Shown: positions 2,925 through 40,962, counted from the stretch's first letter. The stretch: DNA of 64,000 nucleotides from Pristiophorus japonicus (GCF_044704955.1 NC_091989.1:104098001-104162000); one strand, 5' to 3'. Notes: generated by a model not told the origin, from the sequence alone. Made by a program: numbers and translations.

Positions 2925-2968
2925 GTAAACAGGAAAGTGTAATAATACTAGACCCGCATGAAGCGCTG
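2925..2968 (+). CDS. IgSF receptor gene A, first cytoplasmic exon (GKQESVIILDPHEAL)
   Basis: Acceptor cattcatttccag, donor gtaggt, 44 nt, phase 1 to phase 0; same length and entry phase as gene B exon 38557-38600. Confidence 0.7.
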
Positions 2969-3492
2969 GTAGGTTCATCTCATTTATCCGGGAATAGGGT
3001 TGCAATATAAATAAATATTGTTATGATGGGGATATTTTATCAAAACCTATTTTGCAGACGTATTTGCCCTGCTTTGATGTGTCATTCAAATCGTGTTTTC
3101 ACATTTGTTGCGAAGCAGGTGTAAGTTATTAAAGAAAGAGAAACAATGAAATCGGTAGCGTCATTGAACATATAACTAGATAATAATTATGTGTGCATCC
3201 ATCTAGCCGTTGCTTTTGGAATTTGATATTATATGTCTAAGATGCTGAAACGACCTATTGTTTCAACATATCTGAAACACTATATCGTAGTGAAAATCGA
3301 CAGGTTGAAATGTAAATTGCAATGGACACACTATTTAATGGGCATTTGCACATTTTAAAATATATTAGTTGTGGTTTCTGCATTTTATTTGTGGTCCAGT
3401 TCATTCTGTTTATTGTTTGATCAGCAATCTGTAAATTGGGGAAGACAATGAACAAGCCACATAAAAATACATTTTCTTTGTGGCCCATGCAG

Positions 3493-3630
3493 GGTGCCAA
3501 GGACGAGATCATTGCTTATGCTGCCGTAAATTTGAGCAAAGCCAAGGAAATTCCAAGGCGTAAACATGCAGAGGAGAGGACAACATACGCTCAGGAGAAA
3601 CATAGGAACGCGTGGAGCGCCAACATTAAT
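3493..3630 (+). CDS. IgSF receptor gene A, ITIM exon (GAKDEIIAYAAVNLSKAKEIPRRKHAEERTTYAQ...)
   Basis: Acceptor ttttctttgtggcccatgcag, phase 0; ITIM IAYAAV; the GT donor gtaaga at 3631 keeps frame; the probable ancestral donor after 3594 now reads GA. Confidence 0.78.
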
Positions 3631-3779
3631 GTAAGAGCGCAGTATTTGGGGTTGTTCTGACTTTGACCGTGTGTTGTATCTAAAACTGTGTGTGTTATTC
3701 TGACGGCTGCCTTGAGCAGCAAACCACAACCTGGTAAAACGACCACCAATCAACAATATTTAAAACATTGGCTTTTCAG

Positions 3780-3953
3780 ATAAAACAAGGGACAGCCCAG
3801 GACAAGGTGACCTACGCGATTCTAGAATTGTCTGGCACCGAGAAAGCGGGAAAATCTAAAAATAATAAAAGAATCATAGAATATGCCGAGATACAGACGA
3901 AAACCCCAAGAGGAATAACAGAAGCCGTCTACACTGATGCAAGAATGAAATAG
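3780..3953 (+). CDS. IgSF receptor gene A, terminal exon with ITIMs (VTYAIL, IEYAEI, AVYTDA); SIRP-alpha-like inhibitory tail
   Basis: Acceptor ttggcttttcag, phase 0, open to TAG 3951-3953; Y-to-Y spacing of 23 aa, identical to that in the preceding exon. Confidence 0.85.
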   Translation: MKQGTAQDKVTYAILELSGTEKAGKSKNNKRIIEYAEIQTKTPRGITEAVYTDARMK

Positions 3954-4020
3954 AGATACAATTCATTGGTGTATACTGATTAATTCCGAAGCCATATCAA
4001 CTCCACTGATTTAAATGGAA

Positions 4021-4026
4021 AATAAA
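4021..4026 (+). promoter_or_regulatory. Candidate polyadenylation signal of gene A
   Basis: AATAAA about 70 nt after the stop; another AATAAA at 4169-4174. Confidence 0.45.
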
Positions 4027-4729
4027 ATCTGGCGGTTTCTATAAAAGACCGGAGATTCGATTGAATAGTTTAACGCCCAAGCACTGGAAGTGTTAATTAT
4101 CTCCATGTGCAAGTATATCTGTGTTATCCAATCACCGAGATGTAACACATTCCAGTATTATAGTATATAATAAAGCTATGATAATTGTTTAATTTTTTTG
4201 GGGGGGGGGGAATTATTAGTCATAAATATATAGATGCGAGTAATAAAACAATTTTCAAGTTAAAGGTGTTATTTTTTATATAACGATCCTATACTATTTC
4301 AATTAGAAATGATTGAATAAACCATGATATACGTTGTTAAAATGTGGCCCAACCTCGCCAATGGAGTTATAAACTTTTAACATGCAATAGAGGTTTGATT
4401 CAAAAAAGCCTAAATAAATGGCATTGAACTACAAACACCCACTCCTTTTAGAGTGGTTGCCGCATCAGGAAAGCGATAACACGTGGTTTAAAATGTTACA
4501 TTGAGATCTCTTTGGGAAGTAGCTCAACTAAATTACAGGGTTAGAAGATTGTGCAACTGATACCAGAATAACGCTAGCCCAGCAGTTCTAATAACCAAGT
4601 TTTTGATTCCGAATCTGAAGACCATCCAAGACGAAGTGAATTAGTTGCCTCTTGCTTCCTGCAACTGTCATGGTTGCTTGATTGTGTGCATTATCAAGCA
4701 GGAGAATAGACACAGTACCAAGTGTTTTT

Positions 4730-5610
4730 GAATGTTAGAGATTAGAAAACGGCCATTCGACGCACAGAGACTGAAACATTGTTTTTCTCCACAAGAACCA
4801 CTTAGTTAATTCTATACACCTCTTCGCTCTTCATAATCTATAATGTTCCACTTTTTCATGCAGCTCCTTCTCAATGAAAAGGATGATCTGCTTCAACAAC
4901 GGAATACGGCAGGCTATTCCAAATTCGCACACTCTAACTATGGTCTCTGTAAAGAGTATTTTGCATCTCCATTTTGCGATTATTTGAAATGTATGGCTTC
5001 TTGTTACCGTCCACCGGCGAATGACAATAATTTAACAATCCTTCACAAACTTGAAAACCACCATATGCACACCTCTTAATCCTCCCAGCTGCGTTGATGA
5101 AAGCCCTAGCTTCTCAAGTCTCTCCATAACTTTAACCCCACATTCCTGGTAACACAGTAGCTAACCTATGATGCACGCCTTCCATGTTTTTTCTATCCTT
5201 CTTGTAATGGGATGATGATACCAAAATACACCAAACCAATTACAGTCTAAATAAACTAAAATACAACGTTACATCTATGTTTTTCCACTTTATTCCCCTA
5301 GACGGAAACTCAAAGGACTCTTTTCGGTACCAGAATTACCAACTTGTATATTCGCGCAGCAAGTTTAACGAATGTTTTATTTCTCCGTTTTCATCTCCAA
5401 AAATGCATTACTATACATGTATCTGCCATTTACATCTGTTGTTTAACTGCCCACCCAGCGATGCCTATCAGTAATCCGCTACAGGATTTCACAAGCTTCA
5501 TCCCAGTTCTACATCCTTCTTTTACCATTAGGTGTTATCTTCAAGTTTGGATGTTAATCCCTCAATTCCCACCGACCGATAATTTATGTGTGTAATAAAA
5601 AAAACAGCAC
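4730..5610 (-). mobile_element. Old, highly degenerate CR1 3' fragment
   Basis: Recognisable reverse-complement CR1 3' UTR and RT C-terminal sequence; no intact ORF. Confidence 0.55.
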
Positions 5611-5619
5611 CAACTCAGG

Positions 5620-8090: not shown

Positions 8091-10160
8091 TCTAGAAAAC
8101 TATCTTGAATCTAGGGAATTCTGGAAAATGAAAGCTATAGCAACCACTATCCCTGTATCCACCTTTCTCAAAACCCTGAGATTGTTACTATACTAATAGG
8201 TGTTGCTAATACTGACACCTTCGCATGCTTTTCTAAAGCTAAGTAAAGAACATGGCTCATGAGCTCATCTCCGCTGCTGCATTTCAAGTTTTAAATTTAG
8301 CTGTTAAAAAGCAACATTCTGAAAACGCGTGTTGCATAGCAACAGCTATTCAACCTCATATTTCGTGTAATTTCAGGAACACACAACGCTCACATTAAAC
8401 GAAGATTCTATTTGATATTTTCTCTTGTAACCTTTCCTAACCCCACTATCAACTGGAATCTGGAATCACGTCACCTTAAGGCGGCTGAATCGTTTCTTTT
8501 CTCATTTTCCTATATTGCGCTAAGTGTAGAACTGTATTCCTAAATAGATTTTCGACTGTCTAGTTTATTCATCGACACACAAGTGTCAGTGCAGTAATAT
8601 TGTCTATACACTTGATGTTTAACATAACTGAATGTACTCCATACTTTAATGTTGATCACATGGGCTTCCAAAATATATGTTGTGGACAACTGTCTAAAAT
8701 GTCACAAGTATTTGGTTAAACTTACACATATTTTATTCAATTGCATTTTAATTGTAATCATTTTAAGGTGAGTGCTGCTAAATTAAAATTGTCTTTTGTT
8801 TTACACCTTAGGACTGCAGGTTGTACGCGTGCCAAGGTCTATTTTTCCTACAGAATTTCTTGCGGGACATCTTGCCATTCAACTTCATCCACAGCATGAG
8901 CGGGACACAGGGTGGAGGGTAATTATGATGTCACAAGAGGGGAACTTTCATGTAGAATTCGTGCCTTCAAGCAGCAGTTTAACAGTATACAGTGCCTGAA
9001 GAGAGCGGTCAATGTATAGGTAATCCCTTGATAACACTGAAGGCATAATGTATAGATTAGAAGAATGCACTTTCCCTTTAAGCCTTTGATTATGTTCAAA
9101 TGATTGAAATGTTAAAGAACACAAATAAAAATAAGTACACAGACCAAAACGCATGCGTGAGTGCGTAAGCATCCACACTCACACACACGTTAAATTTTTA
9201 GTCTCTGTGCATACCCAAATGAAAAAAGTAAACAACCCTGACTATTATCGTAGGAATATAATAAAAATGAAAGTGAATATAGCAATGATAAAGGCAATTG
9301 TCTTGACAGACTCAATACGCGTAAAGCTCATGTGTTTTCGCTATCTCTAACTTAACCCAGCACCAAATCGTAATTGCTCACCAATCCCAAGCAGAAATGT
9401 ATTTATTTCACCATTCTGTAGTCATGGCGCTAGGTGCATTTTACACCGTCATTACAAGTCTGAGTGAGAACAAGCTGGGCTTTCAGTTATATGCAGTACA
9501 TCATTTTGAGAGCTGAGAATCAGGACTCTGGTTCCACACAAACAATCAGCCACCCCACTGATAGCGTTATCTGAACTGATCCACGTAGCGACTGCATTGA
9601 ATGTTTAGTGTATGTAGCTAACATATAATTTGCTCTCTGTGCAATTTGAAAACAATAATAATACGGTTGTTCTGAGACTGTGTGCTCCTTAGCAATATGA
9701 ATACTACACATGAAGCCGAGATCCATTTACATTCAATGAGAAACAAAAGGGCAGATACACAAATTAAGCCAGTACAAACTATAAACATAATGAGCACAAC
9801 GAAAGATCCCTTGGGAAATTTATTTTTTAACGTAATTTCACCCCACAGTTTAGTCACACTCGGGGTAGTGTCGGCCGCAAGCCCTGTGAGAATAATTAGA
9901 AACACAGAAACATGGAAAATAAGTGCAGGAATAGGCCTTTCGGCCCTTTGTGCCTGCACCACCATTCAATAAGATCATGGCTGAACATTCATCTCAGTAC
10001 CCCTTTCCTGCTTTCTCTCCATACTCCTTGATCCCTTTAGCCACTAGGGCCATATCTCACTCCCTCTTGAATATATCTAATGAACTGGCATCAACAACTT
10101 TCTGCGGCAGAGAATTCCAGAGGATAGCAATTCTCTGAGTGAAGAAGCATCTCCTCATCT

Positions 10161-10328
10161 CTGAGTCGGGAGTCCGTGAATCAGAGAGGCCTACAAAAGG
10201 CCGTGAGGCCGGGGGGGTGCGTCGCTGAGTCGGGAGTCCGGGATTGCTGAGAGGCCTACAAAAGGCCGTGAGGTCGGGAGGTGCATCGCTGAGTCGGGAG
10301 TCCGGGGTCGGCGAGAGGCCTACAAAAA
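10161..10328 (+). repeat. 64-bp tandem monomers (about 2.6 copies) at the CR1 5' end
   Basis: ctgagtcgggagtccg starts at 10161, 10225 and 10289; each unit contains ggcctacaaaa. Confidence 0.9.
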
Positions 10329-21318: not shown

Positions 21319-24300
21319 GTGGCGACGAGTTACGGGATTACAGAATCCACAGAATGGCAAACAACGGATCAGATGAAAAGTACAATGTGGGAGACAATTG
21401 GGAGGACTTTATACAAAAAGGCTCCAGCAAAGCTTTGTAACCAAAGACTGGTTAGGCGATGATAAGGCAGACAAGAAAAGAGCCCATCTCTTGACCAGCT
21501 GTGGCTCAAAAACATACGCTTTAATGTAGGATCTGTTGGCACCCGAGAAACCATCAAGCAAGTCATTTGAAGAATTGAGCACACTGTTAAGAGACCACCT
21601 GAAGCCAGCGAGCAGCCTACACATGGCCAGACACAGGTTCTATAACTACGCTGTATGGGCCAGAGCATACCCGACTTCGTGGCGGAACTTCAGAGGTTGC
21701 CTAGTTTATGTGAGTTCTCCGATGAACTGAGGAGAGAAATGCTGAGACTTTTTCATTGAAGGAATAGGCCACGCAGGCATATTCCAAAAGTTCATAGAGA
21801 CCAAGAACCTGACCTTAGAGGCAGCAGCACTGGTTGCACAGACATTCTTGATAGGGGAAGAAGAAACAAGGTTGATTTACAATGCAGGTACGACAACTAA
21901 CGAAATATCGGAACAAGAAGTTCACAGCATTAAACAAGCTGCTACCCCCACACACAGACAAAACCAGGAGAACAGGCTCTCAACAGCAGGCAGAAGCCAT
22001 CAAGGACCACAGCAACGGCCGTTCACACCTCATCAACCCATAATGTGAGCAATCAACTGCAAACTGAGAGAAGCTCAAGGGAGATCAGCCAGATGCAGCT
22101 CATTCTTTGGGAACACTTTGAACAATGAAACAGGTCTGTGCTGGAAGTGTGGGGGTGGGCACTCGTCAAGGGGATGTCGATTTCAGCAGGCTGTTTTCAG
22201 AAATTGTGAATATACAGGGCATTTGCCCCGCATGTGCAAAAAAACGGCAGCTCAGCTGGTATATGAATCCGATGGGTTGGAAAGCGGACCAGAAGATGGT
22301 AGGGACAGTACCCGGGACACCGATTACAGCGAGTCAACATGATCAATGGCCGCTGCTCCTACAACAGGATGCCTCTTATAATGATGAGGATCCTACTCAA
22401 CGGGATATCTGTCAAGATGGAGCTGGATACGGGAGCGAGTCAATCTCTCATGGGCGCTCAACAATTTGAACAACTGTGGCTGCATAAAAGAGACAGACCA
22501 AAACTCACAAGGGTCGACACCAAACTAAGAACCTATACCAAAGAAATCGTACCAGTCCTCGTCAGCGCCATGCTCTCTGTCACACACAAAGGGACAGAGA
22601 ACCGACTTCCCTGTGGATTGTCCCCGGAGATCCCCCAGCACTGCTGGGGAGAAGCTGGCTGGCAAAACTAAACTGGAAATTGGATGATGTCCATGCCATG
22701 TCGTTAGAGGAACGGAACTCCTGCTCAACAGTTATAAAGTGATTTGAACATCTCTTTCAGCTAGGTGTGGGTACTTTCAAAGGGGCCAAAGTCAAAATCT
22801 ACATCACACATGATGCTAGACCGGTCCATCACAAGGCCAGAGCTTTACCCCATGTGATGATGGAAAAGATTGAACATGAACTAGACAGGCTTCTGCGGGA
22901 AAGCATTATATCACCTGTGGAATTTAACGACTGGGCAAGTCCCATCGTCCCAGTCATGAAGCCTGATGGATCCGTATGAATCTGTGGGGACTACAAATCT
23001 ACCATAAACAGAGTCTCCCTACAGGACCAGTACCCGCTGCCCAGAGCGGAGGACTTATTTGCCACATTGGCTGGAGATAAACTTTTCTCAAAATTAGACC
23101 TCACATCTGCGTATATGATGCAAGAATTGACCGAGGAATCCAAGCTACTCACCACCATCAACACACATCGAGGCCTTTTCATGTACAATCGATGCCCATT
23201 CGGCATCAGGTCGGCAGCTGCCATATTCCAGTGCAGCATGGAGAGTCTGCTCAAGTCCATCCCGGGAACGGTTGTATTTCAAGACGACCTACTTATCATG
23301 GGCAGGGACACCGACTCCCATCTCCGTAATATGGAGGAAGTACTAAAGTGGTTGGATCGGGTAGGCCTACGAGTCAAGAAATCCAAGTGCCTGTTTCTCG
23401 CACCTGAGGTTGAATTTTTGGGCAGAAGGATTGCCGCTGATGGAATCCGCCCAACAGAGTCCAAAACAGAAGCAATTCGCCTGGCACCGAGGCCCCGGAA
23501 TGTCTCAGAACTGTACACCTTTCTCGGGCTACTCAATTACTTTGGGAACTTTATGCAGAACTTAAGCATGCTGCTGGAGCCTCTCCATGTGCTACTCAGG
23601 AAGGGGTGCGATTGGTTTTGGGGGGACGCCCAGGAACGCGCCTTCAAAAGGCACGCAACCTTCTGTGTTCCAACAGTGTTTTGACTTTCTTTGACCCAGG
23701 TAAAAAGCTAGTTCTCACATGCGATGCGTCAGCATATGGGGTCGGGTGCGATTTGCAACATGTCAATAGTGTGGGCAAATTAGAACCCATAGCTTATGCC
23801 TCCAGGTCACTTTCGCAGGCGGAGCACGGGTACAGAATGGTAGAGAAGGAGGCGCTCGCGTGCGTGTACGGTGTCAAAAAGATGCACCAATACCTTTTCG
23901 GGGCCAAGTTCGCATTAGAAACCAACCACAAGCCGCTCACATCTCCCATATCTGAGAGCAAGGCAATAAACGCCAATGCCTCGGCGCGAATTCAACGGTG
24001 GGCACTCATGCTGGCGCCCTACGACTATACCATAAGGCACAGACCAGGCACAGACAACTGTGCTCAGCAGGCTACCCCTGGCGACAACAGAAGGGTCTGA
24101 CGAACAGGAGTGTGAGATAGTCATGGCAATCAATGCCTTTGAGTCCACAGGTTCTCCGATGATGGCTCACCAAATCAGAGCCTGGACGGCCAGTGACCCC
24201 ACGTTATCCTTAGTAAAAAGATGTGTCCTAACCAGTGACTGGGCAGAGGCTTGTGATGCCTGCCCCGAGGAATTAAAACCCTTTCACAGGCGCATGCATG

Positions 24301-25551
24301 AGCTATCACTACAAGCTGACTGCCTGATGTGGGGCAGCACGAGTAGTCATGCCTCTGCGAGGCAGAGAGGCATTTGTCCGGGAGCTCCACCACGAGCACC
24401 CGGGGATCGTTCTCATGAAGATCATAGCCAGATCCCACATCTGGTGGCCTGGTATTGACGCGGACTTGGAGCTCTGCGTCCGAAGGTGCACCATTTGTGC
24501 CCAACTCAGCAATGCCCCCAGGGAGGCTCCACTGAGCCCCTGGCCCTGGCCTACCAAACCGTGGTCGCGGGTGCATGTAGACTATTCAGGCCCATTCATG
24601 GGCAAAATGTTCCTCGTAGTTGTAGATGCATTTACAAAGTGGATCGAATGCACCATTTTAAACTCAAGCACAACCTCCACCACTGTGGAGAGCCTCGCAA
24701 CCATGTATGCAATGCATGGAATCCCTGACATATTGGTCAGTGACAATGGTCCGTGCTTCACCAGCGCAAAATTCCAAGAAGTTATAATTGACCACGGCAT
24801 GAATTGCGTCAAGACGGCACCATTCAAGCTGGCCTCCAACGGTCAGGCGGAGAGAGCAGTGCAAATCATTAAACAAGGCATGCTTAAAATCCAAGGTCCC
24901 ATGCTGCAGGGTCACCTGTCGCGACTGCTGCTGGCATACAGATCTCGTCCGCACTCACTGACTGGGATCCCCCCTGCGCAACTGTTGATGAAAAGGACTT
25001 TAAAAACAAGGCTCTCATTAATCTTCCCAGACATGCATGAAATCGTTGAGGCAAAGCGCCGTAAGCTGACTGATTACCATGACAGAAATTCGAGGTGGAG
25101 ATGGAATGAGATAGGGGACAAAGTGTTTGTACTAAACTATGGCAGGGGTCCCAAATGGCTTGCAGGGACAGTAACGGAAGGAAAGAGGCTGCTGGTAGTA
25201 CAAATGGACAATGGCAAAACCTGTCGGAGGCATGTAGACCAAGTCAAAAGCAGATTTACCAACAACACTGTGGAACCAGAGGCAGACTACAATGTGGAAC
25301 TCGCAGCACACCTGGTGGACAGGCAGAAGGAATAACCTGAGGAAAGGGCAATCCCAACAGACAGACCAGGCGAGTCAACAACAATCACACCAATTGAAAC
25401 AGACAGCCCAGGCGAGATACCAGCAACCACACCCAAAGAAAAACAGGCACCAAGGCAAACAACTGCACCACAACTCAGACGCTCCACGCGAGAGCGTAGA
25501 CCACTTGAGAGACTGAAGCTATAAAGACAATAAGACCTTGGGGGAGGGTGA

Positions 25552-27317: not shown

Positions 27318-29188
27318 ATAAGAACATAAGAAATAGGAACAGGAGTAGGCCATATGACCTCTCGAACCTACTCCGCCATTCAATAAGATCACGGCTGAAC
27401 TGATCATGGACACAGTTCCACTTCCCTGCTCACTCCCCACAATCCCTTATCCCCTTATCGTTCAAGAAAATGCCTATTTCAGTCTTAAATTTAATCCATG
27501 TTCCAGCTTCCACAGCTCTCTGATGCAGTGAATTCCACAGATTTACAATGCTCTGAGAGAAGAAATTTCTCCTCATGTCTGTTTTAAATGGGCAGCCTCT
27601 TATTCTAAGATCATGCCCTCTAGTTCAATCTTCTCCATCAGTGGAAACATCCTCTCTGCATACAACTTGTCAAGCCCCCTCATAATCTTCTACATTTCGA
27701 TACGATTACCTCTCATTCTTCTGAATTCCAATGAGTAGAGGCCCAACCTACTTAACGTTTCCTCATAATTCAACCCCCTCATCTCCCCAATCAACCTAGT
27801 GAACCTTCTCTGATCTGCCTCCAAAGCAAGTACATCCTTTCGTAAATATGGAAACCAAAACTGCACGCAGTATCCCAGGTATGGCCTCACCAATACCTTA
27901 TATGGCTGAAGCAAGACTTCCCTGCTTTTGTACTCCATCCCCTTTGCAGTAAAGGCCAAGATGCCATTGGCCTTCCTCATCGCCTGCTGTACGTGCATAC
28001 TGTCCTTTTGTGTTTTATGCACAAGTACCCCCAGGTCCCGCTGTACTGCTGCACTTTGCAATCTTTCACAATTTAAATAATAACTTGCTCTTTGATTTTT
28101 TTTTCTGCCAAAATTCATGACCACACACTTCCCAACATTATACTCCATCTGCCAAAGTTTTGCCCACTCACTTAGCATATCTATGTCCTTTTGCAGTTTG
28201 TTTGTGTCCTCCTCACACATTACTTTTCCACCCATCTTTGTATCATCAGCAAACTTGGCTACGTTACACTCAGTCCCTTCTTCCAAGTCGTTAATATAGA
28301 TTGTAAATAGTTGGGGTCCCAGCAGGGAGCCCTGCGGCACCCCACTAGTTACTGGTTGCCAACCAGACAATGAACCATTTATCTCAACTTTCTGTTCTCT
28401 GTTAGTTAGCCAATCCTCTATCCATGCTAATTTATTACCCCCGATCCCATGAACTTTTATCTTGTGCAGTAACATTTCATGTGGCACCTTGTCAAATGCC
28501 TTCTGGAAGTCCAAATACACCACATCCTTTGGTTCCCCTTTATCTACTCTGTTCGTTACTTCCTCAAAGAACTCCAGCAAATTTGTCAAAAATGACTTCC
28601 CCTTCATAAATCAATGCTGATTCTGCCTGACTAAATTTTGCTTTTCTAAATGTCCTGCTACTGCTTCTTTAATAATGGTCTCCAACATTTTCCCAACCAC
28701 AGATGTTAGGCTAACTGGTTTATAGTTTCCTGCTTTTTGTCTGCCTCCTTTTTTAAATAGGGGCATTACATTTGCAGTTTTCCAATCTGCTGGGACCTCC
28801 CCAGATTCCAGGGAATTTTGGTAAATTACAACAAATGCATCCACAATCCCTGCCGCTACTTCTCTTAAGACCCTAGGATGCAAGCCATCAGATCCAGGGG
28901 ATTTATTTGCCTTTAGTTCCATTATCTTACTGAGTATCACCTCCTTAGTAATTGTGATTGTGTTAAGTACCTCCCGCCTCCCCCCCCCCCCCACCACCAC
29001 CCCCCCGCCCCCTCATAGCCCCTAGACTATCTACTGTTGGAATATTGTTAGTGTCCTTGACCGTAAAGACTAATACAAAATATTTGTTCAGAGTTTCTGA
29101 CATCTCCATGTTCCCCATTACTAATTCCCTGGTCTCATCCTCTAAGGGACCAACATTTACTTTAGCCATCCTTTTCCTTTTTATATAC
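27318..29188 (-). mobile_element. 5'-truncated CR1 inserted antisense into the RT of the 19036 CR1
   Basis: 305-aa RT ORF 27690-28607 with FADD; tail (acataaga)n at 27318; host reads gaacaaacggac|cttggagtg across it. Confidence 0.92.
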
Positions 29189-32575: not shown

Positions 32576-33539
32576 AGAAACAATGCAAGAATAGGGCTTC
32601 CTATAATTGTACAGATACGAATGTTATGAAACAACAGCTGATTATTCCGTGTACATATTATTACCTCAGTACGCTAAGTTTTTATGCAATCATTTCTCGA
32701 AAGGAAGTTGATGGCAAGGTTTTTCGTAGCTGAAAAATGTCACTATAATTAACAGTGTTCAGAAGCTCTTGGCTCAATTTCGTGCTAAACCATCATTTTG
32801 CCCTCAACAGCTTTGGACTATCTGTAAACTCCAAGAATTGAAGGAGCCCCCATAGCGAGAGAGATTCTGCTATCACCGACACTCCTGGACAGAACAACAG
32901 AAAAGTATTTGCATCCAACAGTTGTTCTCCTCATCTTCACCCTGTCTGCTGCTCTCACTATTGGTTCCCTATGCTATCATATTACTGTCAGCGCTGTTTC
33001 AAATGTTTACCGTTTTTCCTCCTAAACTGCAAATATGTCTTCCAGCAGGCTCTTCTTCATTTCTACTCCCTCAAACAGTTGAATTCAAGACGTATTCCTT
33101 GAAGACCTCCAAACCTTGCTCACTCTTTGCTTCCTCCGATTATCGACATGATTTCAAAACCTCTGCTTACTATTATGAATCACAGCCTCCTGATTTGCAT
33201 TGTGCTTGATCTTAGGCCTTTCAATCTCAAAGGGGACCATATCCATACAACTTGGTTTTTGAATTTAGAATAAATTTAAATGCAGGGAGTGCGTGGCATT
33301 GTGTTTGGAACATTACAGTTCTTTCACCATTGCAGACGCCCGTCACATTAAATTGCTTTGGCCAGCTCAATTGACTTGATCAATTATGTTCTCAAGTTCA
33401 ACTTATTATGAAACTTAAATATATTTTTCAACAGACACAAAATGGTCTGAGGTTGCCTTGAAATAACATTGGGTGTTGTGATGAGGCTTTAATCTACATG
33501 AAGCTCACACCTCCATTTCATTCTTTGAATTCGGCCGTT

Positions 33540-33674
33540 GAGACCACAGTCACATGCGTGTAGTCTCTCACGTCATTATCTCACAATTCACATCAGGTTA
33601 TGCACAGAATTATTTCCCCAAAGTATTAGAGTTCCGTGTTTGTTGTTTTCAAACGGCCAGTATCAATCACTGAA
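33540..33674 (+). promoter_or_regulatory. Candidate proximal promoter of gene B
   Basis: RUNX-type GACCACA 33542-33548, CRE-like TCACGTCA 33568-33575 and GATA-type TTATCT 33576-33581 just upstream of the ATG; motif matches only. Confidence 0.35.
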
Positions 33675-33729
33675 ATGGCTATGAGAGCTGTACTTCGGAG
33701 TATACAGTTCATGGGGCTTACTTTCATAG
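33675..33729 (+). CDS. Gene B exon 1, leader peptide (MAMRAVLRSIQFMGLTFI)
   Basis: ATG in gaaATGg context, phase-1 donor gtattt, 102-nt intron ending tttcttaatag. Confidence 0.8.
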
Positions 33730-33831
33730 GTATTTTCTTTAGTTCGTTCTTTGTCTTTATGCCTCTCTCTCTCTCTGAATCTCGCTCCATTTTTTTTTTA
33801 TAACTCTAACAAATGTTCATTTTCTTAATAG

Positions 33832-34143
33832 TTGCTGCGGATACTCTGTTTGAAGTAGCCCAAGCCCCTGAAAATACCAATTCGATCGCTGGTGCAAACG
33901 TTGCCTTCAATTGCACGTTTCCTATTTTGCAACACGATTCAGATGTGGATGTTCATTGGTGGAAACTTGGCGAAAATGAATTTATACAACCAGACACCAG
34001 GAAACGATTTCTTATTGAGAAAGGAAGAGTCTATTTCGAACTCCGGAATATCAGTGTCCAGGACTCTGGAGTTTATCATTGCGGAGTGATACGTCGGGGA
34101 AACATGTTCGTAAATGGAAGCGGATCAAAGCTTGTTGTTAGAG
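33832..34143 (+). CDS. Gene B exon 2, V-set Ig domain with germline-joined J-like segment
   Basis: VAQAP..G.NVAFNC..VHWWK..RF..LRNISVQDSGVYHC..NGSGSKLVV; phase 1/1; donor gtaaga. Confidence 0.93.
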
Positions 34144-34654
34144 GTAAGAACATTGTAAAGAGCGAATAGGCGGTATTGTCTTACAGTTATTAAATATAAA
34201 TATTAACGTATAGCATTCCTCACTCTCTCACTGTAGCTTTAAACTTACATTAGAAATCAAACGGTTCAATTATAATTCTAGTTACAAAGTTGTAATTATA
34301 AATATAACACGTGTAGAGCGGTTTGCTGTTTTTAAGCCACCTTAATGTTTCATTAATCTTTAGTTCTATAATTTCATGCATGTAAGCTTGCGCAGGAAGC
34401 GTTGTCATGCCATTCAGGTGCGAATGCAAATTGTGATAACTTCAAAGGTTTTCAGTATAAATTACATTTTCATTGGCCTTATTTCAATATATCCGAAACA
34501 GTTTAAAACTGCAGTTTGATGACCATCTAAACTATCAGTCTAAACGTGCTGTTTTCGAGTATAAAGTCTAATTTCAATTATACATGTATGCAAAAGTTAA
34601 TCTACATGATCATTTTTGAATGTTGTGTCCCTGCTCTTGCTGCGATAAATAAGA

Positions 34655-35075
34655 AAGAGTTTGTACTTATATGCCGCATTTGGTGTCCCAAAGCGTTTTA
34701 CAACCAATTAAGTGCTTTTGAAATCTAGTTACTGTATTAGTGTAGGCAAACGTGGCAGCGAATGTACAAGCAGCAATGTCCGACAATGGGACATTTCATG
34801 GTGGTGACTGAGGGATAAATATTGGCCAGGACATCGAGACCATATCTATGCACTGCTTCGAGTAGTGCCATGGGAGGGTTTACGTTCACCTGAGAGGGCA
34901 GAAGGGGCCGAGGTTTAACATTTCATCGAACATCGCTCCGACAGTGCAACATTCCCTCCGTACTGCACTGAAGGGCCAGTCTTGATGATTTGTGTTGAAG
35001 TCTCTGGAATAGGCTTAGAAGTCACGAAGTTCTTACTCGGAGGCAGGGGTGCTACTGCTAAGCCACGACTGACAA
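34655..35075 (-). mobile_element. Deu-domain SINE (SacSINE1-like) in gene B intron 2
   Basis: Reverse complement of the element at 42400-42780; matches the recalled Deu core and cgctttgggac...tatataa tail. Confidence 0.7.
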
Positions 35076-35719
35076 TGTATTCTCTAGGACTGAGAGATCA
35101 GAGTCTCGGAAGCCTGGTTCTATTTCCTGTTCTTCAGAAAGTAGCTTCTCTCGGCCTCTGGTCGACGAACCAAATAATTTCCATCTCCTCAAATCCCTTC
35201 AAAAACGAATATATTATCGATAAAGAATTTTGTGAATGTGTCCCTGAATTGTGCAAACTCCATTCGCCGCAGTTGTTAATTTCTAGATATGAATGTTCCA
35301 TGACGCCAAAGTAACCCGTGAAGTGAAAGGTTCGTTTTTGGTTAATATCCCCGATTGTGATGTTATACGTTTATTATGCAAGTAATACGAATAAAGAAAA
35401 ACCTCGTGGCTGGAAATAGAATTCCTTTTGTGGTCGCGGTTAACTGTGAGAGAAAGTTCGCATCTAAGATGCTATTTATGTCTTGCCGTTGTTTATTTCT
35501 CGGGTTACCTCAGTAACAAGACGGGCGATGATGTGGGGTTGCGCTTCCTCTGCGCACCGTAGGTAGTGACAATGTGTGAGCGCATTCTGAAGGTTTTGTC
35601 GGGTTGGGAATAGTGGGCATAGAAGGTCTTCACAAATGCATCTTCAATTCGCTACACAGACCAGGAGAATGCTTCATCCACGCTTTCAAATTGTTCTCAA
35701 TAACGAGGTAACGCTGGAA

Positions 35720-36020
35720 AGTGAGGTTTCTATGTTTTATAGAGGGAGATGTATAAATTGTGAACATAATGGGCAAAAGAGGGGAAAATTACACAGCAAG
35801 TTGCTATGATCTGAAATGCACTGCCTGAAAGGGTGGCCGAAACCGATTCTATAGCAACCTTCAACAAGGAAATTGGTTAACTACTTGAAGGGGAACATTT
35901 GCGGGGCTCTGGGGAAAGAGCAGGGGTGTGGAACTAATTAGATTGTTCTTCCAATGAGCCAGCATAGGTACGATGGGCCGAGTGGCCTATTTTTGTGCTG
36001 TATATTCTATGATTCTATAA
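35720..36020 (+). mobile_element. CR1 3' UTR fragment in gene B intron 2
   Basis: gatgggccgagtggcct...attctatgattctat tail. Confidence 0.7.
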
Positions 36021-36203
36021 TCTATAGTAATTAAAACGTAATGTTTTCAATTCACCATAAACACACAGATGTATAGCTTTCTCATACTGTTGTATCCGAT
36101 CTGAAGACATATTATGCCATTTGGAGTGTTCCACAAAAGGAGATTAAGTCATAAATTCCAGAATAGATCAGAAATGTAACTTTCTTTTTCGACCTGTCAC
36201 CAG

Positions 36204-36521
36204 CTCCCCCAACTCCCCTGAGGATTGTTCGAAAAGAATCGGAAAGTAATGTACCTGTATTCGATTCTTTGACTCTCGTGTGTGAAATGTCTTCATTTTA
36301 CCCGGATGAACTGGCTATCACTTGGTACAAAAATAATGGAAGTATTGAGACCGGAATACATACTACTAAGCAGCTCAGCAGAGCCGGGATGTATGAAGCT
36401 TCCAGTTTTTTTGCAGAGGCACAGCCTGTCCAAGGAGGAACTGTTTATGTCTGTCTGGTTGCTCACGTGACCCTCCAGTTTCCAGCCATGGTAATTTACT
36501 TGGTTCCAAATTCTAATTCAG
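36204..36521 (+). CDS. Gene B exon 3, C1-set Ig domain
   Basis: LTLVC...FYPDELAITWYKN...G.YEASS...YVCLVAHVTL; acceptor tcaccag, donor gtaaga, phase 1/1. Confidence 0.93.
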
Positions 36522-37910
36522 GTAAGATGTCACTTTGCTTACAAAAATAAACGTCTGCCAGTAATCTGAGTGAATTATTATGAGACGTGTAAAGATTTTC
36601 TCTTTTGCTGTTTAAAGTGTAAGAAATGTAGCTACAAATTGCGAACAGTGTAAATGATCAACCACATGATATTTTTGTAATATCCCATCAATATTAAAAG
36701 GATTACTATTTACTGTTTATTTCCAGAGCACATAGATTTTCAGTTTCTGATATATCACCTCCTCCGGAATGGTTACAGGCGGAACTTTCAACTTCGGTGG
36801 GGTGGGATGCAAAACTGGCGGTATAGGATCGGGCGCGTTATGCACACGCCAGATTTTCCTTTCGATTTGTTTTTATATACCTACCAAAGCTGAACGTTCG
36901 CCCAGTGCATCCCGTCAGTTCAGTAAATATTGCAACCTGGAAAACAGTTATGTACAAAATTATTTTTTTTCACATCAGGCCAAGTTTATTCATCAATTTG
37001 CACTCTTCGTTCAAACTGCCTCCACTATCACCTCATCTCAAATCAAATAACCGCTGATTTAGTGCAAAATGATCGAAACGCTTAGTAGATTACGTTGATC
37101 TAGAACACGTATGTGGCTTGAGTGTTGCAATTCTTTAATGTGAAGTGTCAAATGATGTAGTATTGTGCTGATCGCTCTATGGCAAATATATGTGTGACCA
37201 TTTCCTGTGATCGCTATTGCTAGTGAAATGGGAATCATGCAAACCAGTTATCTTAGGTACCGAGTACTAGCTGCATATTTTTTCTTTTCTTCAAATAGTG
37301 GCAGTTACATCGTTTGGAATGCATGGAGCGTTGATGAAACAAAGCAGCGGTGTGATAAATTTTACAAACATAATTCTACAGAAAAAAGCAACAAGCTTAG
37401 ACATACCTAGCAGAGGAAATGCTCCCAAAAGAAGTTATGACAAAATCCCACATAGTGACGAGGGCAAATGCTAAATTAATTAATTAACTATTTAAAACTA
37501 AAAATTAATTTTTATCTTATCAATAGAAAATGCTCTTATCCCGCAGAGTGAAAAACAGATACAGAAACTCAAGATCGGCCAGCCTTCCAGGAACATAGAA
37601 TAAACAGGGATGAAATTGGTCTTTAGCGGTAGCTAAAAATGGCCAATATCCATTCAGTCTTCTTTACACTCCTGGCGATTTTCTATTACATTAGCCCGTT
37701 TTCCGCCGGGCGATAAGGATAATGTCTCCCACCCTTTGCGTTTAGTTTTCAATAGCGATAAATCAATTTCCATCAGTTAACAATTTGATTACCCATGCTC
37801 AACTGACGTAAACATTTGTTCAAGTATCAGATTCCGTTTAGGGCTCTAACTGTTGACGGCATCCTCAACAATGCACAGCCCTATATGTAAAAGTTATATT
37901 AATTTTGCAG

Positions 37911-38030
37911 GCAGTGACTGTACCTCACCCTCACCTTATTTACGGATCATTGGATGTGCAGGCTTTGCGATGACGTTTCTGGTGCTACTGATTATTGTTG
38001 GAATGTCGTTCACATGCAGTAACAGTAAAG
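37911..38030 (+). CDS. Gene B exon 4, stalk + transmembrane (GSDCTSPSPYLRIIGCAGFAMTFLVLLIIVGMSFTCSNSK)
   Basis: Acceptor aattttgcag, donor gtaagt, phase 1/1; hydrophobic helix with an N-terminal Arg. Confidence 0.88.
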
Positions 38031-38556
38031 GTAAGTTATCACCAGATTGTAAAAGTTAAATCCAAATTAAAACAAACAGAAAGGGCTAGTCAGCATGACT
38101 TGATCCACGCTGTAATTTACTGGTCAGAAAATTTTTTGCCGCTGGAATAGAGCTCTTGGTGGTGGTTGAATTTTGAAATCGGTCTGTGGTCCGGAAATGC
38201 AGTTTTTATATTAGAATAGTATGAACATAAAGATGGATTGTATCTCCGCTGCGCGGTCTCCCACCACACCACAATCGGAAAATGGTCTCCCTCATGTTTA
38301 AATACACTAGGGGATGAATATATCTGAAATTCTTCTCCCGATTTTTTTCAGGCAGAGGTGTCAGACTGTTTATGTCTTTATAGAGAGCAATGTCGCATTA
38401 ATATTGATCAACTGGTATCCCACGGCGAAAATCCAGATTGCGGAGTGTTATGATTGTTTTTCGACTTTGCCCTCACTGTAATTTGACATTGGCCGTACTT
38501 GCTGTATCATATTGTGCATCATTAACAATGACGTTTTGAATTTTGTGTTTTGCCAG

Positions 38557-38603
38557 GCAGACACAGAAAAAATGAAGCAAACAATGGTGACGAGTCTAAG
38601 TAA
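38557..38603 (+). CDS. Gene B exon 5, short cytoplasmic tail GRHRKNEANNGDESK* (total predicted product 283 aa)
   Basis: Acceptor ttttgtgttttgccag; 44 coding nt like gene A exon 2925-2968, then TAA where a GT donor is expected. Confidence 0.65.
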
Positions 38604-40039
38604 ACATTCATCCGATTGACGTTTAAAGCGCATTGTGATGATTAATTTCAGATTCCAGCATTCGCCGTATTTTACTTCTGTTTTAGTGATCATTTTGTGT
38701 TGAGCTCAGAACATTCCAATTCTATTTCTGACAAGGGGTAACACTTCTGTGTGCTTTTCCAGTTGACTTACTTTGGAATGGGACATCGAAATCTGTCAGC
38801 ATGTAGTACTCTCAAGAAGGCTGGCGCAGAATTCGTACCGAAATCCATTGTCCAGGCACTCAGTCTGCCCAGGTCCAGGAGCAGTGCACTTTCTGTCCGG
38901 ACCAATACAACAGTCTGGGGACACTCCCAGTGTATGCCGACACAGTGGCAGGGTCTAATGCCCGGTGAGAAAGGCAGGACATATAAGTGAGGCACCGGGT
39001 CGCAGGGTTTTGAAAGCAGCAGCTAGCAGGCTCCCAAACCCAGACAATGGTTTGGTAACTTGGGAAAAATATCCAACTTAACTTTTAGCATTCTATTTGT
39101 TTTGTTGCAAGGCCTTTTGAGGCCATCTAGTCGGTGGAGAGCAGGCAGCCACGGCGCAAATCTAATATCTTCTTCATGAGGCATCTCTGCATCGAGATAC
39201 TTAAAATTCTTCGTATAGGAAATGGGCATGAGACCAAGAGTTCCCTCTCCCACCTAGCTGCCATGAGTAGGTCGAGCTGGACTACTGCTGTCCCTAGATC
39301 CCGAAGCAAAATAACGGGGATTAGGCCCGGTGTAATTGGTCAGTGTCCCTATTTTCCTGACCGCTGCGCCCAAGGACATGTAATTTTACTCGGGCAAAAA
39401 TATGGAAAATGAACCTTACACGAAAATCCCATCTTGGGGTGTGTTATTTTGAAACATCGATATACTTTCTCCTGAGATTGGCAGTTTAGTTTCAATTAGC
39501 CACAGTTCCGCACCAGCAACTATTTTCCACCCACTCCTCAAGGACGAGCTCCCCATTGCCCTTGGAAACCCAGCTTGGAGCCCTGCAAGGAAATTGTAAA
39601 AGGTTGGCCACGGAAGATTGACTTGGGCCAATGACATAACAGTGAGTGGCCACAAAGAGCGTTGCACCAAATTAAGTTTTTTGTGCTGTTGTTATGCACC
39701 ATGTAACTCTCGCTAGAGGCACACAGAATGGTAGTTTTAAATTTATGTCCCACGCTTTGCGTACTCAAAGTGGGTTGAGACTGCGTTTTTGAGGCGAGTG
39801 TAGCATTTCAGAGATTTAGAGCGCTCCTGCTTGTAACATTGAAACGTTTGTATTTATGTGCATCCATAAACACTTGGCGTCAATGGAATTTGACGATATT
39901 ACCTACATTACCTACATGTGCTCCAAAATAATTATTTTGCTGTTCATTTGGACCTCCTGATGTCGTGGAGGGCGCTATACAAATGCAAATGATCTTACTT
40001 TTTTCAAAATGCTATCTGAAAAGTATGCTAAGCGTTTGG

Positions 40040-40420
40040 AAATAAGATTAGGTTCATAGGGCCTTATGTCACTAAGATGGGAGATGAGGATCGACTGAAG
40101 AAACTGTTTTTTTTTAACTAAGACAAAGAATTGAAAAGAAGATCTGATAGAGATGTTCACATTTTGAAGGATATTAAGTAAATAACTAGAGGAAATCTAT
40201 TTCCACTGACCCATGAGTCGGCAACTAGAGGTCGTAAATTTAAGATCATCACCTAAAGAACAAAAAGGTGGTATAATGTTTCTTAGCCAGGTGGTTGTTG
40301 GGTGGTGGAATTTCCTACCAGACTGTTGGTGAAATCAGAATCCATAGAAGCTTTTGCAAGAGGAGGAGATAACTATTTCCAAAAAAAAATGATTAAACGG
40401 TAGGGGGAAACGACTAAGTG
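40040..40420 (+). mobile_element. Old CR1 3' fragment
   Basis: DLIEMF...TRGRKFK remnants. Confidence 0.55.
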
Positions 40421-40787
40421 GTTACCCCGTTATAAGAGCACGAATATGTAAAATGACATGATACTAACAATATCAAACAGGTGGCCAGTGAAACTGTGGA
40501 CGCAATGGGCATTAAATATTGCATACTGTGGACAATGTCTTGATAATTATTAAACTATATTAACAACAGTTATGGAGTTGGATAATCTACAGCGTTACCT
40601 GAAAAGCACCTATATGGGAATGGATGTTATAGAAATGTAATTACCTGAGGTAAGTAGCTGACCCAATAACAAAAATATACCAAGCTAAGGAATATTCAAA
40701 TATCATCAAGACTTTAATCTGATTTACGAAGCATTCTCTAGATTAATTAAGTTGATGAGATAATTCTACAAGGCATTACTTTTATAG

Positions 40788-40962
40788 ACCTTGCAAGAAG
40801 CAGTTGATAACCCGCTGACTTACGCAACTGCCGACTAAGAAAAATGGAGAACCGAGAAGGAAGGAAAAGAGCACAGAGTACGCAGAAATAGGGAACGTAC
40901 ACCAAAAGAGATACGCCTTATTCGTCTACACGGAACCAAGATTCAAATTATACCAATTGTAG
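40788..40962 (+). pseudogene. Frameshifted relic of the gene B terminal ITIM/ITSM exon
   Basis: TLQEAVDNPLTYATAD* followed, in another frame, by KSTEYAEI..VYTEPRFK; aligns to gene A exon 3780-3953 with an 11-nt deficit. Confidence 0.82.

What the first reader, a model, noticed from the sequence alone, without database searches (positions are those of the whole stretch)
2925..40962. Paired-receptor conversion: ITIM-bearing gene A next to a tail-truncated paralogue B whose ITIM exon is decaying
Seen in sequence: (1) Both genes have a 44-nt phase-1 juxtamembrane exon (2925-2968 and 38557-38600). In A it ends in a GT donor (CTG|gtaggt). In B it reads AAG|taaac, consistent with loss of one G that turned the donor into a TAA stop. 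(2) The old terminal exon of B is still present at 40788, with the same 33 nt from acceptor to first Tyr and the same 16-codon EY..VY spacing as in A, but 58 nt rather than 69 nt between the two main Tyr codons. This frameshift destroys the first ITIM (LTYATAD*) and puts TEYAEI out of frame. (3) All extracellular and TM exons of B are intact with consistent phases. Established knowledge: SIRP, LILR, PIR and KIR families contain activating members derived from inhibitory ones by tail loss. Inference: B is a retained activating or decoy receptor derived from an inhibitory ancestor in a shark immune cluster.
Basis: partly seen in the sequence, partly recalled or inferred. Interest (0 to 1): 0.9.

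Follow-up and report, generated by a model that had tools for sequence, protein, structure and literature searches.

The report
Shark SIRP-like receptor losing inhibitory tail
A shark immune-receptor gene with an intact outer part and a membrane arginine has lost its inhibitory tail through two small DNA lesions, an ordinary event for this receptor type that here left its fossil exon behind.

Summary
The sequence observations hold. Gene B (33675-38603, + strand) has five clean exons: leader, germline-joined VJ, C1, stalk/TM and juxtamembrane. It runs into TAA at 38601 because the juxtamembrane donor is damaged. The old terminal exon at 40788 is still recognisable but carries an 11-nt deletion.

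Orthologues settle the reading. The V and C1 exons, tested separately, place B in one elasmobranch orthogroup (support 97.6 and 99/92). The two halves of the relic exon, in two different frames, best match the tails of B's own orthologues: Chiloscyllium at 71% and 83%, then S. torazame and Mustelus.

The interpretation needs correcting in two places.
- **The membrane Arg is ancestral.** It occurs in orthologues that still carry the ITIM/ITSM tail, so B descends from a dual Arg-plus-ITIM receptor, not a purely inhibitory one.
- **A is not B's partner.** It is a distant paralogue (tail 34% identical, with an extra exon), and its outer part lies outside the window.

Predicted orthologues in three rays, Heterodontus and S. 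canicula also lack the tail, so tail loss appears recurrent.

No RNA run was listed, so expression is untested. The family is auto-labelled "SIRP-alpha-like". The scan has already reported a similar case elsewhere in this genome (s1-874488).

The parts
2925..2968 (+). Gene A juxtamembrane exon (44 nt, starts in phase 1, ends in phase 0; encodes KQESVIILDPHEAL)
   Evidence: Polypyrimidine tract and AG acceptor, open frame, CTG|GTAGGT donor. The upstream TM, C1 and V exons lie before the window start.
3493..3630 (+). Gene A tail exon with the first Tyr pair (IIAYAAV ITIM, then TTYAQE 23 residues later)
   Evidence: Acceptor CATGCAG|, donor AAT|GTAAGA. It is 42-48% identical to the equivalent tail exon of family members P0048, P0029, P0041, P0058 and P0004. 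No counterpart exists in B.
3780..3953 (+). Gene A terminal coding exon (VTYAIL ITIM, IEYAEI, AVYTDA; stop TAG 3951-3953)
   Evidence: Acceptor TTTTCAG|. It is 55-58% identical to Callorhinchus and other family tails, E about 1e-11. AATAAA lies at 4021.
33675..33729 (+). Gene B leader exon (MAMRAVLRSIQFMGLTFI, ends in phase 1)
   Evidence: ATG and TAG|GTATTT donor. The sequence matches orthologue N-termini such as MSARAVLQGIQFMEFIF in Heterodontus.
33832..34143 (+). Gene B germline-joined VJ exon (V-set domain with a J-like NGSGSKLVV strand and no RSS gap)
   Evidence: Pfam V-set 9.4e-08. It is 66% identical to Heterodontus P0162. The V tree places it in a 10-member orthogroup with SH-aLRT 97.6.
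36204..36521 (+). Gene B C1-set exon
   Evidence: Pfam C1-set 1.1e-10. It is 77-80% identical to the Heterodontus and Cetorhinus orthologues. The C1 tree gives orthogroup support of 99/92.
37911..38030 (+). Gene B stalk and TM exon (SDCTSPSPYLRIIGCAGFAMTFLVLLIIVGMSFTCSNSK; Arg codon CGG at 37943-37945)
   Evidence: AG/GT sites and phase 1-1. The YLRIFGCAGF motif with R is shared with the Heterodontus, both Scyliorhinus and Chiloscyllium orthologues. Rays have K and Mustelus has Q.
38557..38603 (+). Gene B juxtamembrane exon (RHRKNEANNGDESK) running into TAA 38601-38603; damaged donor, with a cryptic GT at 38600-38601
   Evidence: Sequence read. RHRKNEANN matches RQRKDEANN of Heterodontus. Orthologue alignment places the ancestral exon end after TCT at 38597 (inference).
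40788..40962 (+). Gene B relic terminal exon. Frame 0 reads TLQEAVDNPLTYATAD then TAA (40836-40838). An 11-nt deletion lies at about 40830-40839. Frame +1 reads KNGEPRRKEKSTEYAEIGNVHQKRYALFVYTEPRFKLYQL then a stop at 40960-40962. TGA at 40816-40818 blocks frame +1 upstream of the deletion.
   Evidence: Alignment to A's terminal exon. The best matches are B's own orthologues: P0168 at 71% (frame 0) and 83% (frame +1), plus P0167 and P0165. Frames are shown.

Best explanation
Gene B is the orthologue, in this shark genome, of one conserved elasmobranch lineage of non-rearranging VJ-C1-TM receptors. This lineage belongs to the large cartilaginous-fish family that NCBI auto-labels 'tyrosine-protein phosphatase non-receptor type substrate 1-like' (SIRP-alpha-like), 'tapasin-related-like' or 'Ig lambda-like'.

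The ancestral gene of this lineage combined two features. One was a basic residue two to three positions inside the outer end of the TM helix. The other was a short cytoplasmic tail made of a juxtamembrane exon plus a terminal exon carrying an ITIM (LTYAxV) and an ITSM-like TEYAEI, 23 residues apart.

In B the tail has been cut off by two lesions:
- a 1-2 nt loss at the juxtamembrane donor, which leaves AAG TAA;
- an 11-nt deletion between the two Tyr motifs of the terminal exon.

Every splicing option I could construct gives a Tyr-free product. Read-through gives ...DESK then a stop. Use of the cryptic GT at 38600 gives ...DESKPCKKQLITR then a stop.

Shown:
- the exon structure;
- the two lesions;
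- the orthology;
- the ancestral Arg-plus-tail state;
- an ectodomain that is not evolving faster than in its orthologues.

Inferred:
- The truncated gene is still functional.
- It signals, if at all, only through a partner recruited by the TM Arg, as an activating-type or at least non-inhibitory receptor.
- The basis for both inferences is that tail-less, Lys-bearing orthologues are predicted in three ray genera with conserved ectodomains.

Gene A is a neighbouring, distantly related family member. It has the family's full four-to-five-tyrosine SIRP-alpha-style tail.
For: **Exon anatomy and lesions.** Read directly from the sequence.

**Orthogroup.** The C1 tree gives 99/92 support and the V tree gives SH-aLRT 97.6, from separate exons.

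**Relic exon.** It best matches B's own orthologues in two different frames, at E=1.8e-06 and 3.9e-14, with exactly 11 nt missing.

**Ancestral state.** TM Arg together with an intact ITIM/ITSM tail is seen in Chiloscyllium P0168 and S. torazame P0167. Lys with a short tail is seen in Mobula, Hypanus and Pristis. Arg with a short tail is seen in Heterodontus and S. canicula.

**Ectodomain rate.** The relative-rate test shows no excess change on B in V plus C1. For example, 15 against 14 unique changes versus Heterodontus. All 15 comparisons give p>0.12.

**Conserved residues.** All family-invariant Cys, Trp and Gly residues are kept.

**Lesion placement.** Both lesions fall in the 219 nt of tail, out of about 1023 nt of coding sequence. 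The chance of that if lesions were spread evenly is about 0.046 (my arithmetic).

**Family pattern.** A TM-embedded basic residue goes with Tyr-free tails. The counts are 12 against 4, versus 18 against 24 (odds ratio 4.0, p=0.04). The script misses five more basic, tail-less cases, and the rows are not independent.
Against: - No transcript evidence. No RNA run was listed, so read laying could not be used.
- Raw reads over 38595-38605 and 40820-40840 could not be inspected. An assembly error or a null allele private to this individual is therefore not excluded.
- The orthologue tails come from automatic gene models. Some 'short' forms may be alternative isoforms rather than genomic losses.
There is therefore no dN/dS estimate and no dating of the lesions.
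- The relic exon is so well preserved (83% identity to Chiloscyllium after the deletion) that the loss is recent. Too little time may have passed for a dead gene to show damage in its ectodomain.
- An adaptor partner is unproven. A 2014 survey found no FcR-gamma homologue in sharks (PMC4016189).
Confidence: 0.6

Rival explanations
1. B is a young unitary pseudogene. The tail lesions are simply the first hits in a gene that has lost its function altogether, and the ectodomain looks intact only because too little time has passed.
For: - The donor is damaged and a frameshift is present.
- The relic exon is barely decayed, so the event is recent.
- No expression evidence exists.
- Earlier scan notes report other damaged family members in this genome (s1-876483; not tested here).
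Against: - Both lesions lie in the tail and none lies in the 804 nt of leader, V, C1 and TM. The chance of that if lesions were spread evenly is about 0.05.
- There is no rate acceleration in V or C1.
- Tail-less orthologues with a conserved ectodomain and TM Lys are predicted across three ray genera. This orthogroup can therefore persist without the tail.
Confidence: 0.22
2. A and B are a paired inhibitory/activating couple, and B arose from an A-like purely inhibitory gene by tail loss.
For: - A and B lie on the same strand, 30 kb apart.
- Both have a 44-nt phase-1 juxtamembrane exon.
- Their terminal exons are homologous, with identical acceptor-to-Tyr and EY-to-VY spacing.
Against: - The terminal exons are only 34% identical.
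- A has an extra Tyr-pair exon that is absent from B and from all B orthologues.
- B's relic matches its own orthologues far better than it matches A (83% against 34%).
- The TM Arg predates the tail loss.
- A's ectodomain is unseen.
Confidence: 0.08
3. The lesions are assembly errors or a rare allele, and the species' normal B gene still encodes the Arg-plus-ITIM/ITSM receptor seen in Chiloscyllium.
For: - No reads could be inspected.
- The relic exon is otherwise highly conserved, including an open 42-codon frame after the deletion.
Against: - Two independent lesions sit 2.2 kb apart.
- Neither lies in a long homopolymer; the longest nearby run is five A's.
- An 11-nt deletion is not a typical consensus error (sequence read).
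Confidence: 0.08

Closest known systems
SIRP family (SIRP-alpha inhibitory; SIRP-beta with TM Lys and DAP12; SIRP-gamma tail-less)
   Same: - N-terminal V domain with a J-like strand followed by a C1-set domain.
- The family profile aligns across V and C1 of human SIRP-alpha (2wng, E=2.2e-32, rank 4) and SIRP-gamma (4i2x).
- A's tail has two Tyr-pair modules, as the SIRP-alpha tail does (the comparison with SIRP-alpha rests on my own knowledge).
- The family mixes ITIM-tailed members with short-tailed members carrying a basic TM residue.
- NCBI auto-names many members SHPS-1/SIRP-alpha-like.
   Different: - One C1 domain rather than two.
- With the V exon alone, no SIRP chain was among the 40 PDB matches at E up to 0.01. 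Ig heavy chains and UrIg2 score as well as or better than SIRP in the profile search.
- B's basic residue is an Arg at the outer TM edge, and it coexists with the ITIM tail in orthologues.
- CD47 binding and DAP12 coupling are untested.
- Orthology to tetrapod SIRPs is not shown.
KIR2DL4-type dual receptors (TM Arg plus cytoplasmic ITIM), and tail loss giving activating KIR, LILR or PIR members
   Same: - The ancestral state of B's orthogroup is a TM basic residue together with an ITIM/ITSM tail.
- Derived forms keep the basic residue and lose the tail through small mutations. A fossil exon is left behind, as in some activating KIR and LILR genes (the KIR/LILR comparison rests on my own knowledge).
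   Different: - The ectodomain is VJ plus C1, not C2/I-set.
- There is no evidence of an adaptor.
- It is an independent evolutionary origin in cartilaginous fish.
UrIg / UrIg2 (non-rearranging VJ-C genes of elasmobranchs; PMC12227049)
   Same: - Germline-joined VJ exon with a split leader, followed by C1-set domains.
- UrIg2 (9dmx) is the second-best PDB hit of the family profile, at E=8.4e-36.
   Different: - UrIg and UrIg2 have three to eleven C domains.
- A term search of that paper found no ITIM mention, and it reports expression outside lymphocytes.
- B has one C1 domain, a TM with Arg and an ITIM-type tail ancestry.

Membership tests
Elasmobranch VJ-C1-TM receptor orthogroup (models named 'tapasin-related-like', 'SHPS-1-like' or 'NCR3LG1-like') | V and C1 domains cluster with the orthogroup to the exclusion of other family members | tested here: met
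   The C1 tree gives a clade of 11 with 99/92 support. The V tree gives a clade of 10 with SH-aLRT 97.6.
Elasmobranch VJ-C1-TM receptor orthogroup (models named 'tapasin-related-like', 'SHPS-1-like' or 'NCR3LG1-like') | Stalk/TM motif Y-L-(R/K)-I/V-F-G-C-x-G-F and an RQRKxEANN-type juxtamembrane exon | tested here: met
   B's YLRIIGCAGF and RHRKNEANN match P0162, P0164, P0167, P0168 and the ray orthologues.
Paired activating/inhibitory receptor couple (A with B) | Near-identical ectodomains in the two linked genes | not testable with these tools
The two tails are only 34% identical.
Paired activating/inhibitory receptor couple (A with B) | One member with a functional ITIM tail | tested here: met
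   A's three tail exons are open with good splice sites and carry IIAYAAV, VTYAIL and IEYAEI.
Paired activating/inhibitory receptor couple (A with B) | The other member has a short tail and a charged TM residue acquired for adaptor coupling | tested here: inconclusive
   A short Tyr-free tail and a TM Arg are present. However, the Arg is ancestral and coexists with ITIM tails in orthologues. Adaptor binding is untested.
SIRP family | V-set plus two C1-set domains | tested here: not met
   There is only one C1 exon between the V and TM exons. No further Ig exon was found anywhere in the window.
SIRP family | Specific sequence kinship to SIRP ectodomains above other V-C1 proteins | tested here: inconclusive
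   SIRP-alpha ranks 4th (2.2e-32), behind an IgA heavy chain, UrIg2 and CT3. With the V exon alone, no SIRP chain was among the 40 matches at E up to 0.01.
SIRP family | Cytoplasmic tail with four Tyr in two ITIM pairs that recruit SHP-1/2 | tested here: inconclusive
   A has two Tyr-pair modules 23 residues apart. A tail-only database search found only chimaera relatives. SHP binding is not testable.
UrIg / UrIg2 | VJ followed by three or more C domains | tested here: not met
   B has a single C1 exon. UrIg architecture is taken from PMC12227049.
Rearranging antigen-receptor chain (Ig light chain or TCR) | Separate V and J segments flanked by RSS | tested here: not met
   The J-like strand NGSGSKLVV is contiguous with V in one exon, 33832-34143.
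Tapasin-related protein (the auto-label of several orthologues) | Large tapasin-type N-terminal domain before the Ig domains | tested here: not met
   The leader exon splices directly to the V exon. The mature protein starts at the V domain.

The most novel reading that the evidence does not exclude
B's orthogroup is an ancient receptor, at least as old as the shark-ray split. It originally combined an adaptor-coupling TM Arg/Lys with an ITIM/ITSM tail, making it a dual-signal receptor. Separate lineages have repeatedly shed the inhibitory tail while keeping the basic residue. On current gene models these lineages are the rays, Heterodontus, S. canicula and the sawshark, with a partial loss in Mustelus. 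On this reading, activating receptors in this family arise from dual-signal ancestors by tail loss alone. The sawshark copy is the one case where the molecular fossils are still readable.
Probability: 0.35. Interest if true: 0.6.

Novelty: new member of a known kind. Interest (0 to 1): 0.42.

Why it matters
Conversion of inhibitory receptors into activating or decoy forms by tail loss is a textbook theme in mammalian KIR, LILR, PIR, SIRP and Siglec families. It is thought to be driven by pathogens. Seeing it in a cartilaginous fish has two consequences.
- It places the same evolutionary process in sharks and rays, a lineage that separated from our own early in jawed-vertebrate history.
- It occurs here in a non-rearranging VJ-C1 receptor family that resembles antigen-receptor chains.

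The orthologue comparison adds a testable point. In this lineage the membrane arginine came first and the tail was lost later, several times.

In itself the case is ordinary for its kind. It is also unproven at the RNA and protein level.

Tried and rejected
- **RNA and read evidence.** The look-up of sequencing runs on 33500-41400 listed no run.
- **Orthologue and upstream DNA.** I therefore have no orthologue DNA, no dN/dS, no dating and no access to gene A's upstream exons.
- **Joined model.** Each exon was searched on its own by reference, and natural orthologue proteins served as full-length queries.
- **Relic of A's middle exon in B.** I searched 38300-41300 for one. blastn and tblastn found nothing above noise.
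- **More Ig exons in the window.** None was found.
- **Alternative splice sites for B.**
  - An acceptor at 38560 gives a frame unlike any orthologue.
  - The cryptic donor at 38600 re-enters the TEYAEI frame but meets TGA at 40816-40818.
  - All three frames of the relic exon stop before TEYAEI.
- **Tail-only homology search.** P0058 residues 262-406 found only one chimaera paralogue. SIRP-alpha tail homology therefore stays a resemblance, not a result.
- **Literature.** Searches for shark or cartilaginous-fish SIRP-like, ITIM or paired receptors found no description of this family. One paper reading failed on a term that was too short.
- **UrIg/UrIg2 membership.** Considered and rejected on domain number.
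- **Squalomorph orthologue.** None was found in the protein collection to time the loss.

Full report
**1. What is in the sequence**

Gene B lies on the + strand and has five clean exons.
- The leader exon is 33675-33729.
- The germline-joined VJ exon is 33832-34143.
- The C1 exon is 36204-36521.
- The stalk/TM exon is 37911-38030.
- The juxtamembrane (JM) exon starts at 38557.

All have AG acceptors and good GT donors (GAG|GTAAGA, CAG|GTAAGA, AAG|GTAAGT), and all junctions are phase 1. Pfam calls the two large exons V-set (9.4e-08) and C1-set (1.1e-10). The TM exon encodes ...SPYLRIIGCAGFAMTFLVLLIIVGMSF..., with the Arg at 37943-37945.

The JM exon reads (G)RHRKNEANNGDESK and then TAA at 38601-38603. 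The local sequence is TCTAAGTAAAC. There is therefore no GT directly after AAG. The only nearby GT (38600-38601, TAA|GTAAAC) lacks the G at -1 and at +5 that every other donor of the gene has.

Downstream, at 40788 and behind a proper acceptor (TTTTATAG|), lies a disused terminal exon. Frame 0 reads TLQEAVDNPLTYATAD and stops at 40836-40838. Frame +1 reads ...KNGEPRRKEKSTEYAEIGNVHQKRYALFVYTEPRFKLYQL and stops at 40960-40962.

Only the tail of gene A is in the window, but it has three exons rather than two.
- The JM exon is 2925-2968.
- A middle exon, 3493-3630, carries IIAYAAV and, 23 residues later, TTYAQE.
- The terminal exon, 3780-3953, carries VTYAIL, IEYAEI 23 residues later, and AVYTDA.

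These are 33 nt from acceptor to first Tyr, 16 codons from EY to VY, and 69 against 58 nt between the main Tyr codons.

**2. Is it more than chance, and what is B?**

A and B are only distantly alike. The terminal exons are 34% identical at protein level, the JM exons show no detectable similarity, and B has no trace of A's middle exon. The decisive evidence comes from other species.

A search of 1.84 billion representative proteins with the V exon alone found 92 relatives at E up to 1e-10. Those whose sources I looked up are all from sharks, rays and the chimaera Callorhinchus. Their sources name them 'tyrosine-protein phosphatase non-receptor type substrate 1-like' (that is, SIRP-alpha-like), 'tapasin-related protein-like', 'immunoglobulin lambda-1 light chain-like' or 'NCR3LG1-like'.

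Trees built separately from the C1 exon and from the V exon place B in the same well-supported orthogroup. I never joined the exons. Support is 99/92 for C1 and SH-aLRT 97.6 for V. The other members are single models from Heterodontus, Cetorhinus, Mustelus, Chiloscyllium and two Scyliorhinus species, with Pristis, Mobula and Hypanus as the ray branch. B is 66% (V) and 77% (C1) identical to the Heterodontus protein.

**3. The relic exon read against true orthologues**

The Chiloscyllium orthologue (P0168) ends ...YVRIFACAGF...NRQGNDEASHCGNS TFQETIDNSLTYATVQPVSSMKNGNPRTKEKGTEYAEIRNVHQKR. The S. torazame orthologue (P0167) ends ...YLRIFGCAGF...SRQRKGGANNCGKS VKEVTYAEVELIRSKKNGNPPGKEKSTVYADIRNVRKER.

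B's frame-0 piece matches P0168 at 71% (E=1.8e-06). Its frame +1 piece matches at 83% (E=3.9e-14). Between ...TYAT and KNG... the orthologues have 7 residues (21 nt), and B has 10 nt. The 11-nt deletion is thus confirmed against orthologues as well as against paralogue A.

The JM peptide aligns with orthologues only when shifted by one residue: RHRKNEANNGDES against RQRKDEANNCDKS. B has therefore lost one codon at the exon start, and the ancestral exon probably ended after TCT at 38597. This is inference. Only DNA from close relatives can decide.

In either case the product lacks every Tyr motif.
- Read-through gives ...DESK then a stop.
- Splicing at the cryptic GT gives ...DESKPCKKQLITR then a stop.

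One curiosity is worth recording. The donor shift and the 11-nt deletion sum to a multiple of three. A transcript spliced at 38600 would therefore return to the TEYAEI frame, but TGA at 40816-40818 lies in between.

**4. What this does to the interpretation**

The Arg at the outer TM edge is not a novelty acquired with the tail loss.
- It is present in every shark orthologue except Mustelus, which has Gln. That includes the two that keep the ITIM/ITSM tail.
- It is replaced by Lys in all three rays.

The ancestral receptor of this lineage therefore carried both a basic TM residue and an inhibitory-type tail. This resembles what is known for KIR2DL4 (my own knowledge).

Tail-less forms are predicted repeatedly.
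- Rays end ...FRFISCRDR or in a Tyr-free 20-residue tail.
- Heterodontus has a stop inside the JM exon (...EANNCD).
- S. canicula ends ...FIRSSYEDIASRI.
- Mustelus stops just after its first ITIM.

These are automatic gene models, so some may be isoforms. Only in B is the loss shown at DNA level. Across the wider family, a TM-embedded basic residue goes with Tyr-free tails. The counts are 12 against 4, versus 18 against 24 (odds ratio 4.0, p=0.04). The script misses five further basic, tail-less cases, and the rows are not independent.

**5. Functional gene or pseudogene?**

Several points favour retained function.
- All invariant Ig residues are kept.
- B's V and C1 exons have accumulated no more unique changes than any orthologue. 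Against Heterodontus the counts are 15 and 14, and all 15 tests give p>0.12.
- Both lesions lie in the 219 nt of tail and none in the 804 nt upstream. The chance of that if lesions were spread evenly is about 0.05.
- The ray orthologues show that this very lineage can persist without the tail while conserving its ectodomain and TM Lys.

Other points count against it, or leave it open.
- The relic is so well preserved that the loss is recent. Relaxed constraint would not yet be visible.
- No RNA run was listed.
- Orthologue DNA could not be fetched.
- The adaptor that the Arg would engage is unknown. A 2014 survey found no FcR-gamma in shark data (PMC4016189).

**6. Comparison with known families**

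A profile of 29 family members hits the following in the PDB.

| Rank | PDB entry | Protein | E-value |
|---|---|---|---|
| 1 | 2rcj | IgA1 heavy chain | 1.4e-40 |
| 2 | 9dmx | UrIg2 | 8.4e-36 |
| 4 | 2wng | SIRP-alpha, across V and C1 | 2.2e-32 |
| 12 | 4i2x | SIRP-gamma | 1.3e-27 |

The family works like SIRPs: a V-C1 ectodomain, a multi-Tyr inhibitory tail, and short-tailed members with a basic TM residue. It fails the two-C1 criterion, however, and specific kinship to SIRPs over other V-C1 proteins is not shown.

It is not UrIg or UrIg2, which have three or more C domains (PMC12227049). It is not a rearranging chain, because V and J lie in one exon. It is not tapasin-related, because it has no N-terminal tapasin domain.

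I found no paper describing this family.

**7. Earlier scan notes**

- Notes on other parts of this genome call it a Japanese sawshark and report many VJ-C1-TM-ITIM genes (s1-876460, s1-876461). I did not test either statement.
- One follow-up (s1-874488, 5.8 Mb away) describes a very similar 'SIRP-like activating receptor with fossil tail'. The phenomenon has therefore been found before on other DNA of this genome.

**8. Verdict**

This is a new member of a known kind of event: tail loss in a paired-type immune receptor. It is made more informative by the orthologue evidence that the TM Arg preceded the loss and that the tail appears to have been lost repeatedly. Interest is moderate.

Noticed in passing
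window 22118-25335 (+): LTR-retroelement gag-pol. It has a Zn-knuckle gag, RVT_1 (23067-23681, 3.4e-21), and Integrase_H2C2 plus rve (24349-25332). It is split over several frames, so it is probably degraded.
   Followed up: partly
window 198-2393 (-), 27693-28607 (-), 43322-44368 (+): LINE-type endonuclease and reverse-transcriptase ORFs (RVT_1 at 4.4e-22 and 3e-34). The first set sits inside gene A's TM-to-JM intron, which explains why that intron exceeds 2.9 kb against 526 nt in B.
   Followed up: partly
window 51080-51427 (+): Remnant of a PIF/Harbinger-type transposase (DDE_Tnp_4, 5.3e-15).
   Followed up: partly
window 37919-37921: B has a Cys in the membrane-proximal stalk (SDCTSPSP). 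The aligned shark orthologues (Heterodontus, Mustelus, both Scyliorhinus) have Ser there. This could allow a B-specific interchain disulfide.
   Followed up: partly
window 38599-40818: The donor shift and the 11-nt deletion together restore the reading frame, so a transcript spliced at the cryptic GT at 38600 re-enters the TEYAEI frame. A TGA at 40816-40818 in the shifted stretch blocks it. This is probably coincidence.
   Followed up: yes
family proteins P0002, P0007, P0071, P0169, P0170, P0171: This subgroup of the family has a TM of the form (P/H)R(F/L)(I/V)L...(D/E/V)H, with a basic residue at the outer edge and often an acidic one near the inner edge. The tail is always short and Tyr-free. 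It is a distinct putative activating-type TM exon.
   Followed up: no
ORFs at 55429-55791 (-) and 57980-58516 (-) gave no Pfam hit at E up to 0.001 in my scan.
   Followed up: no
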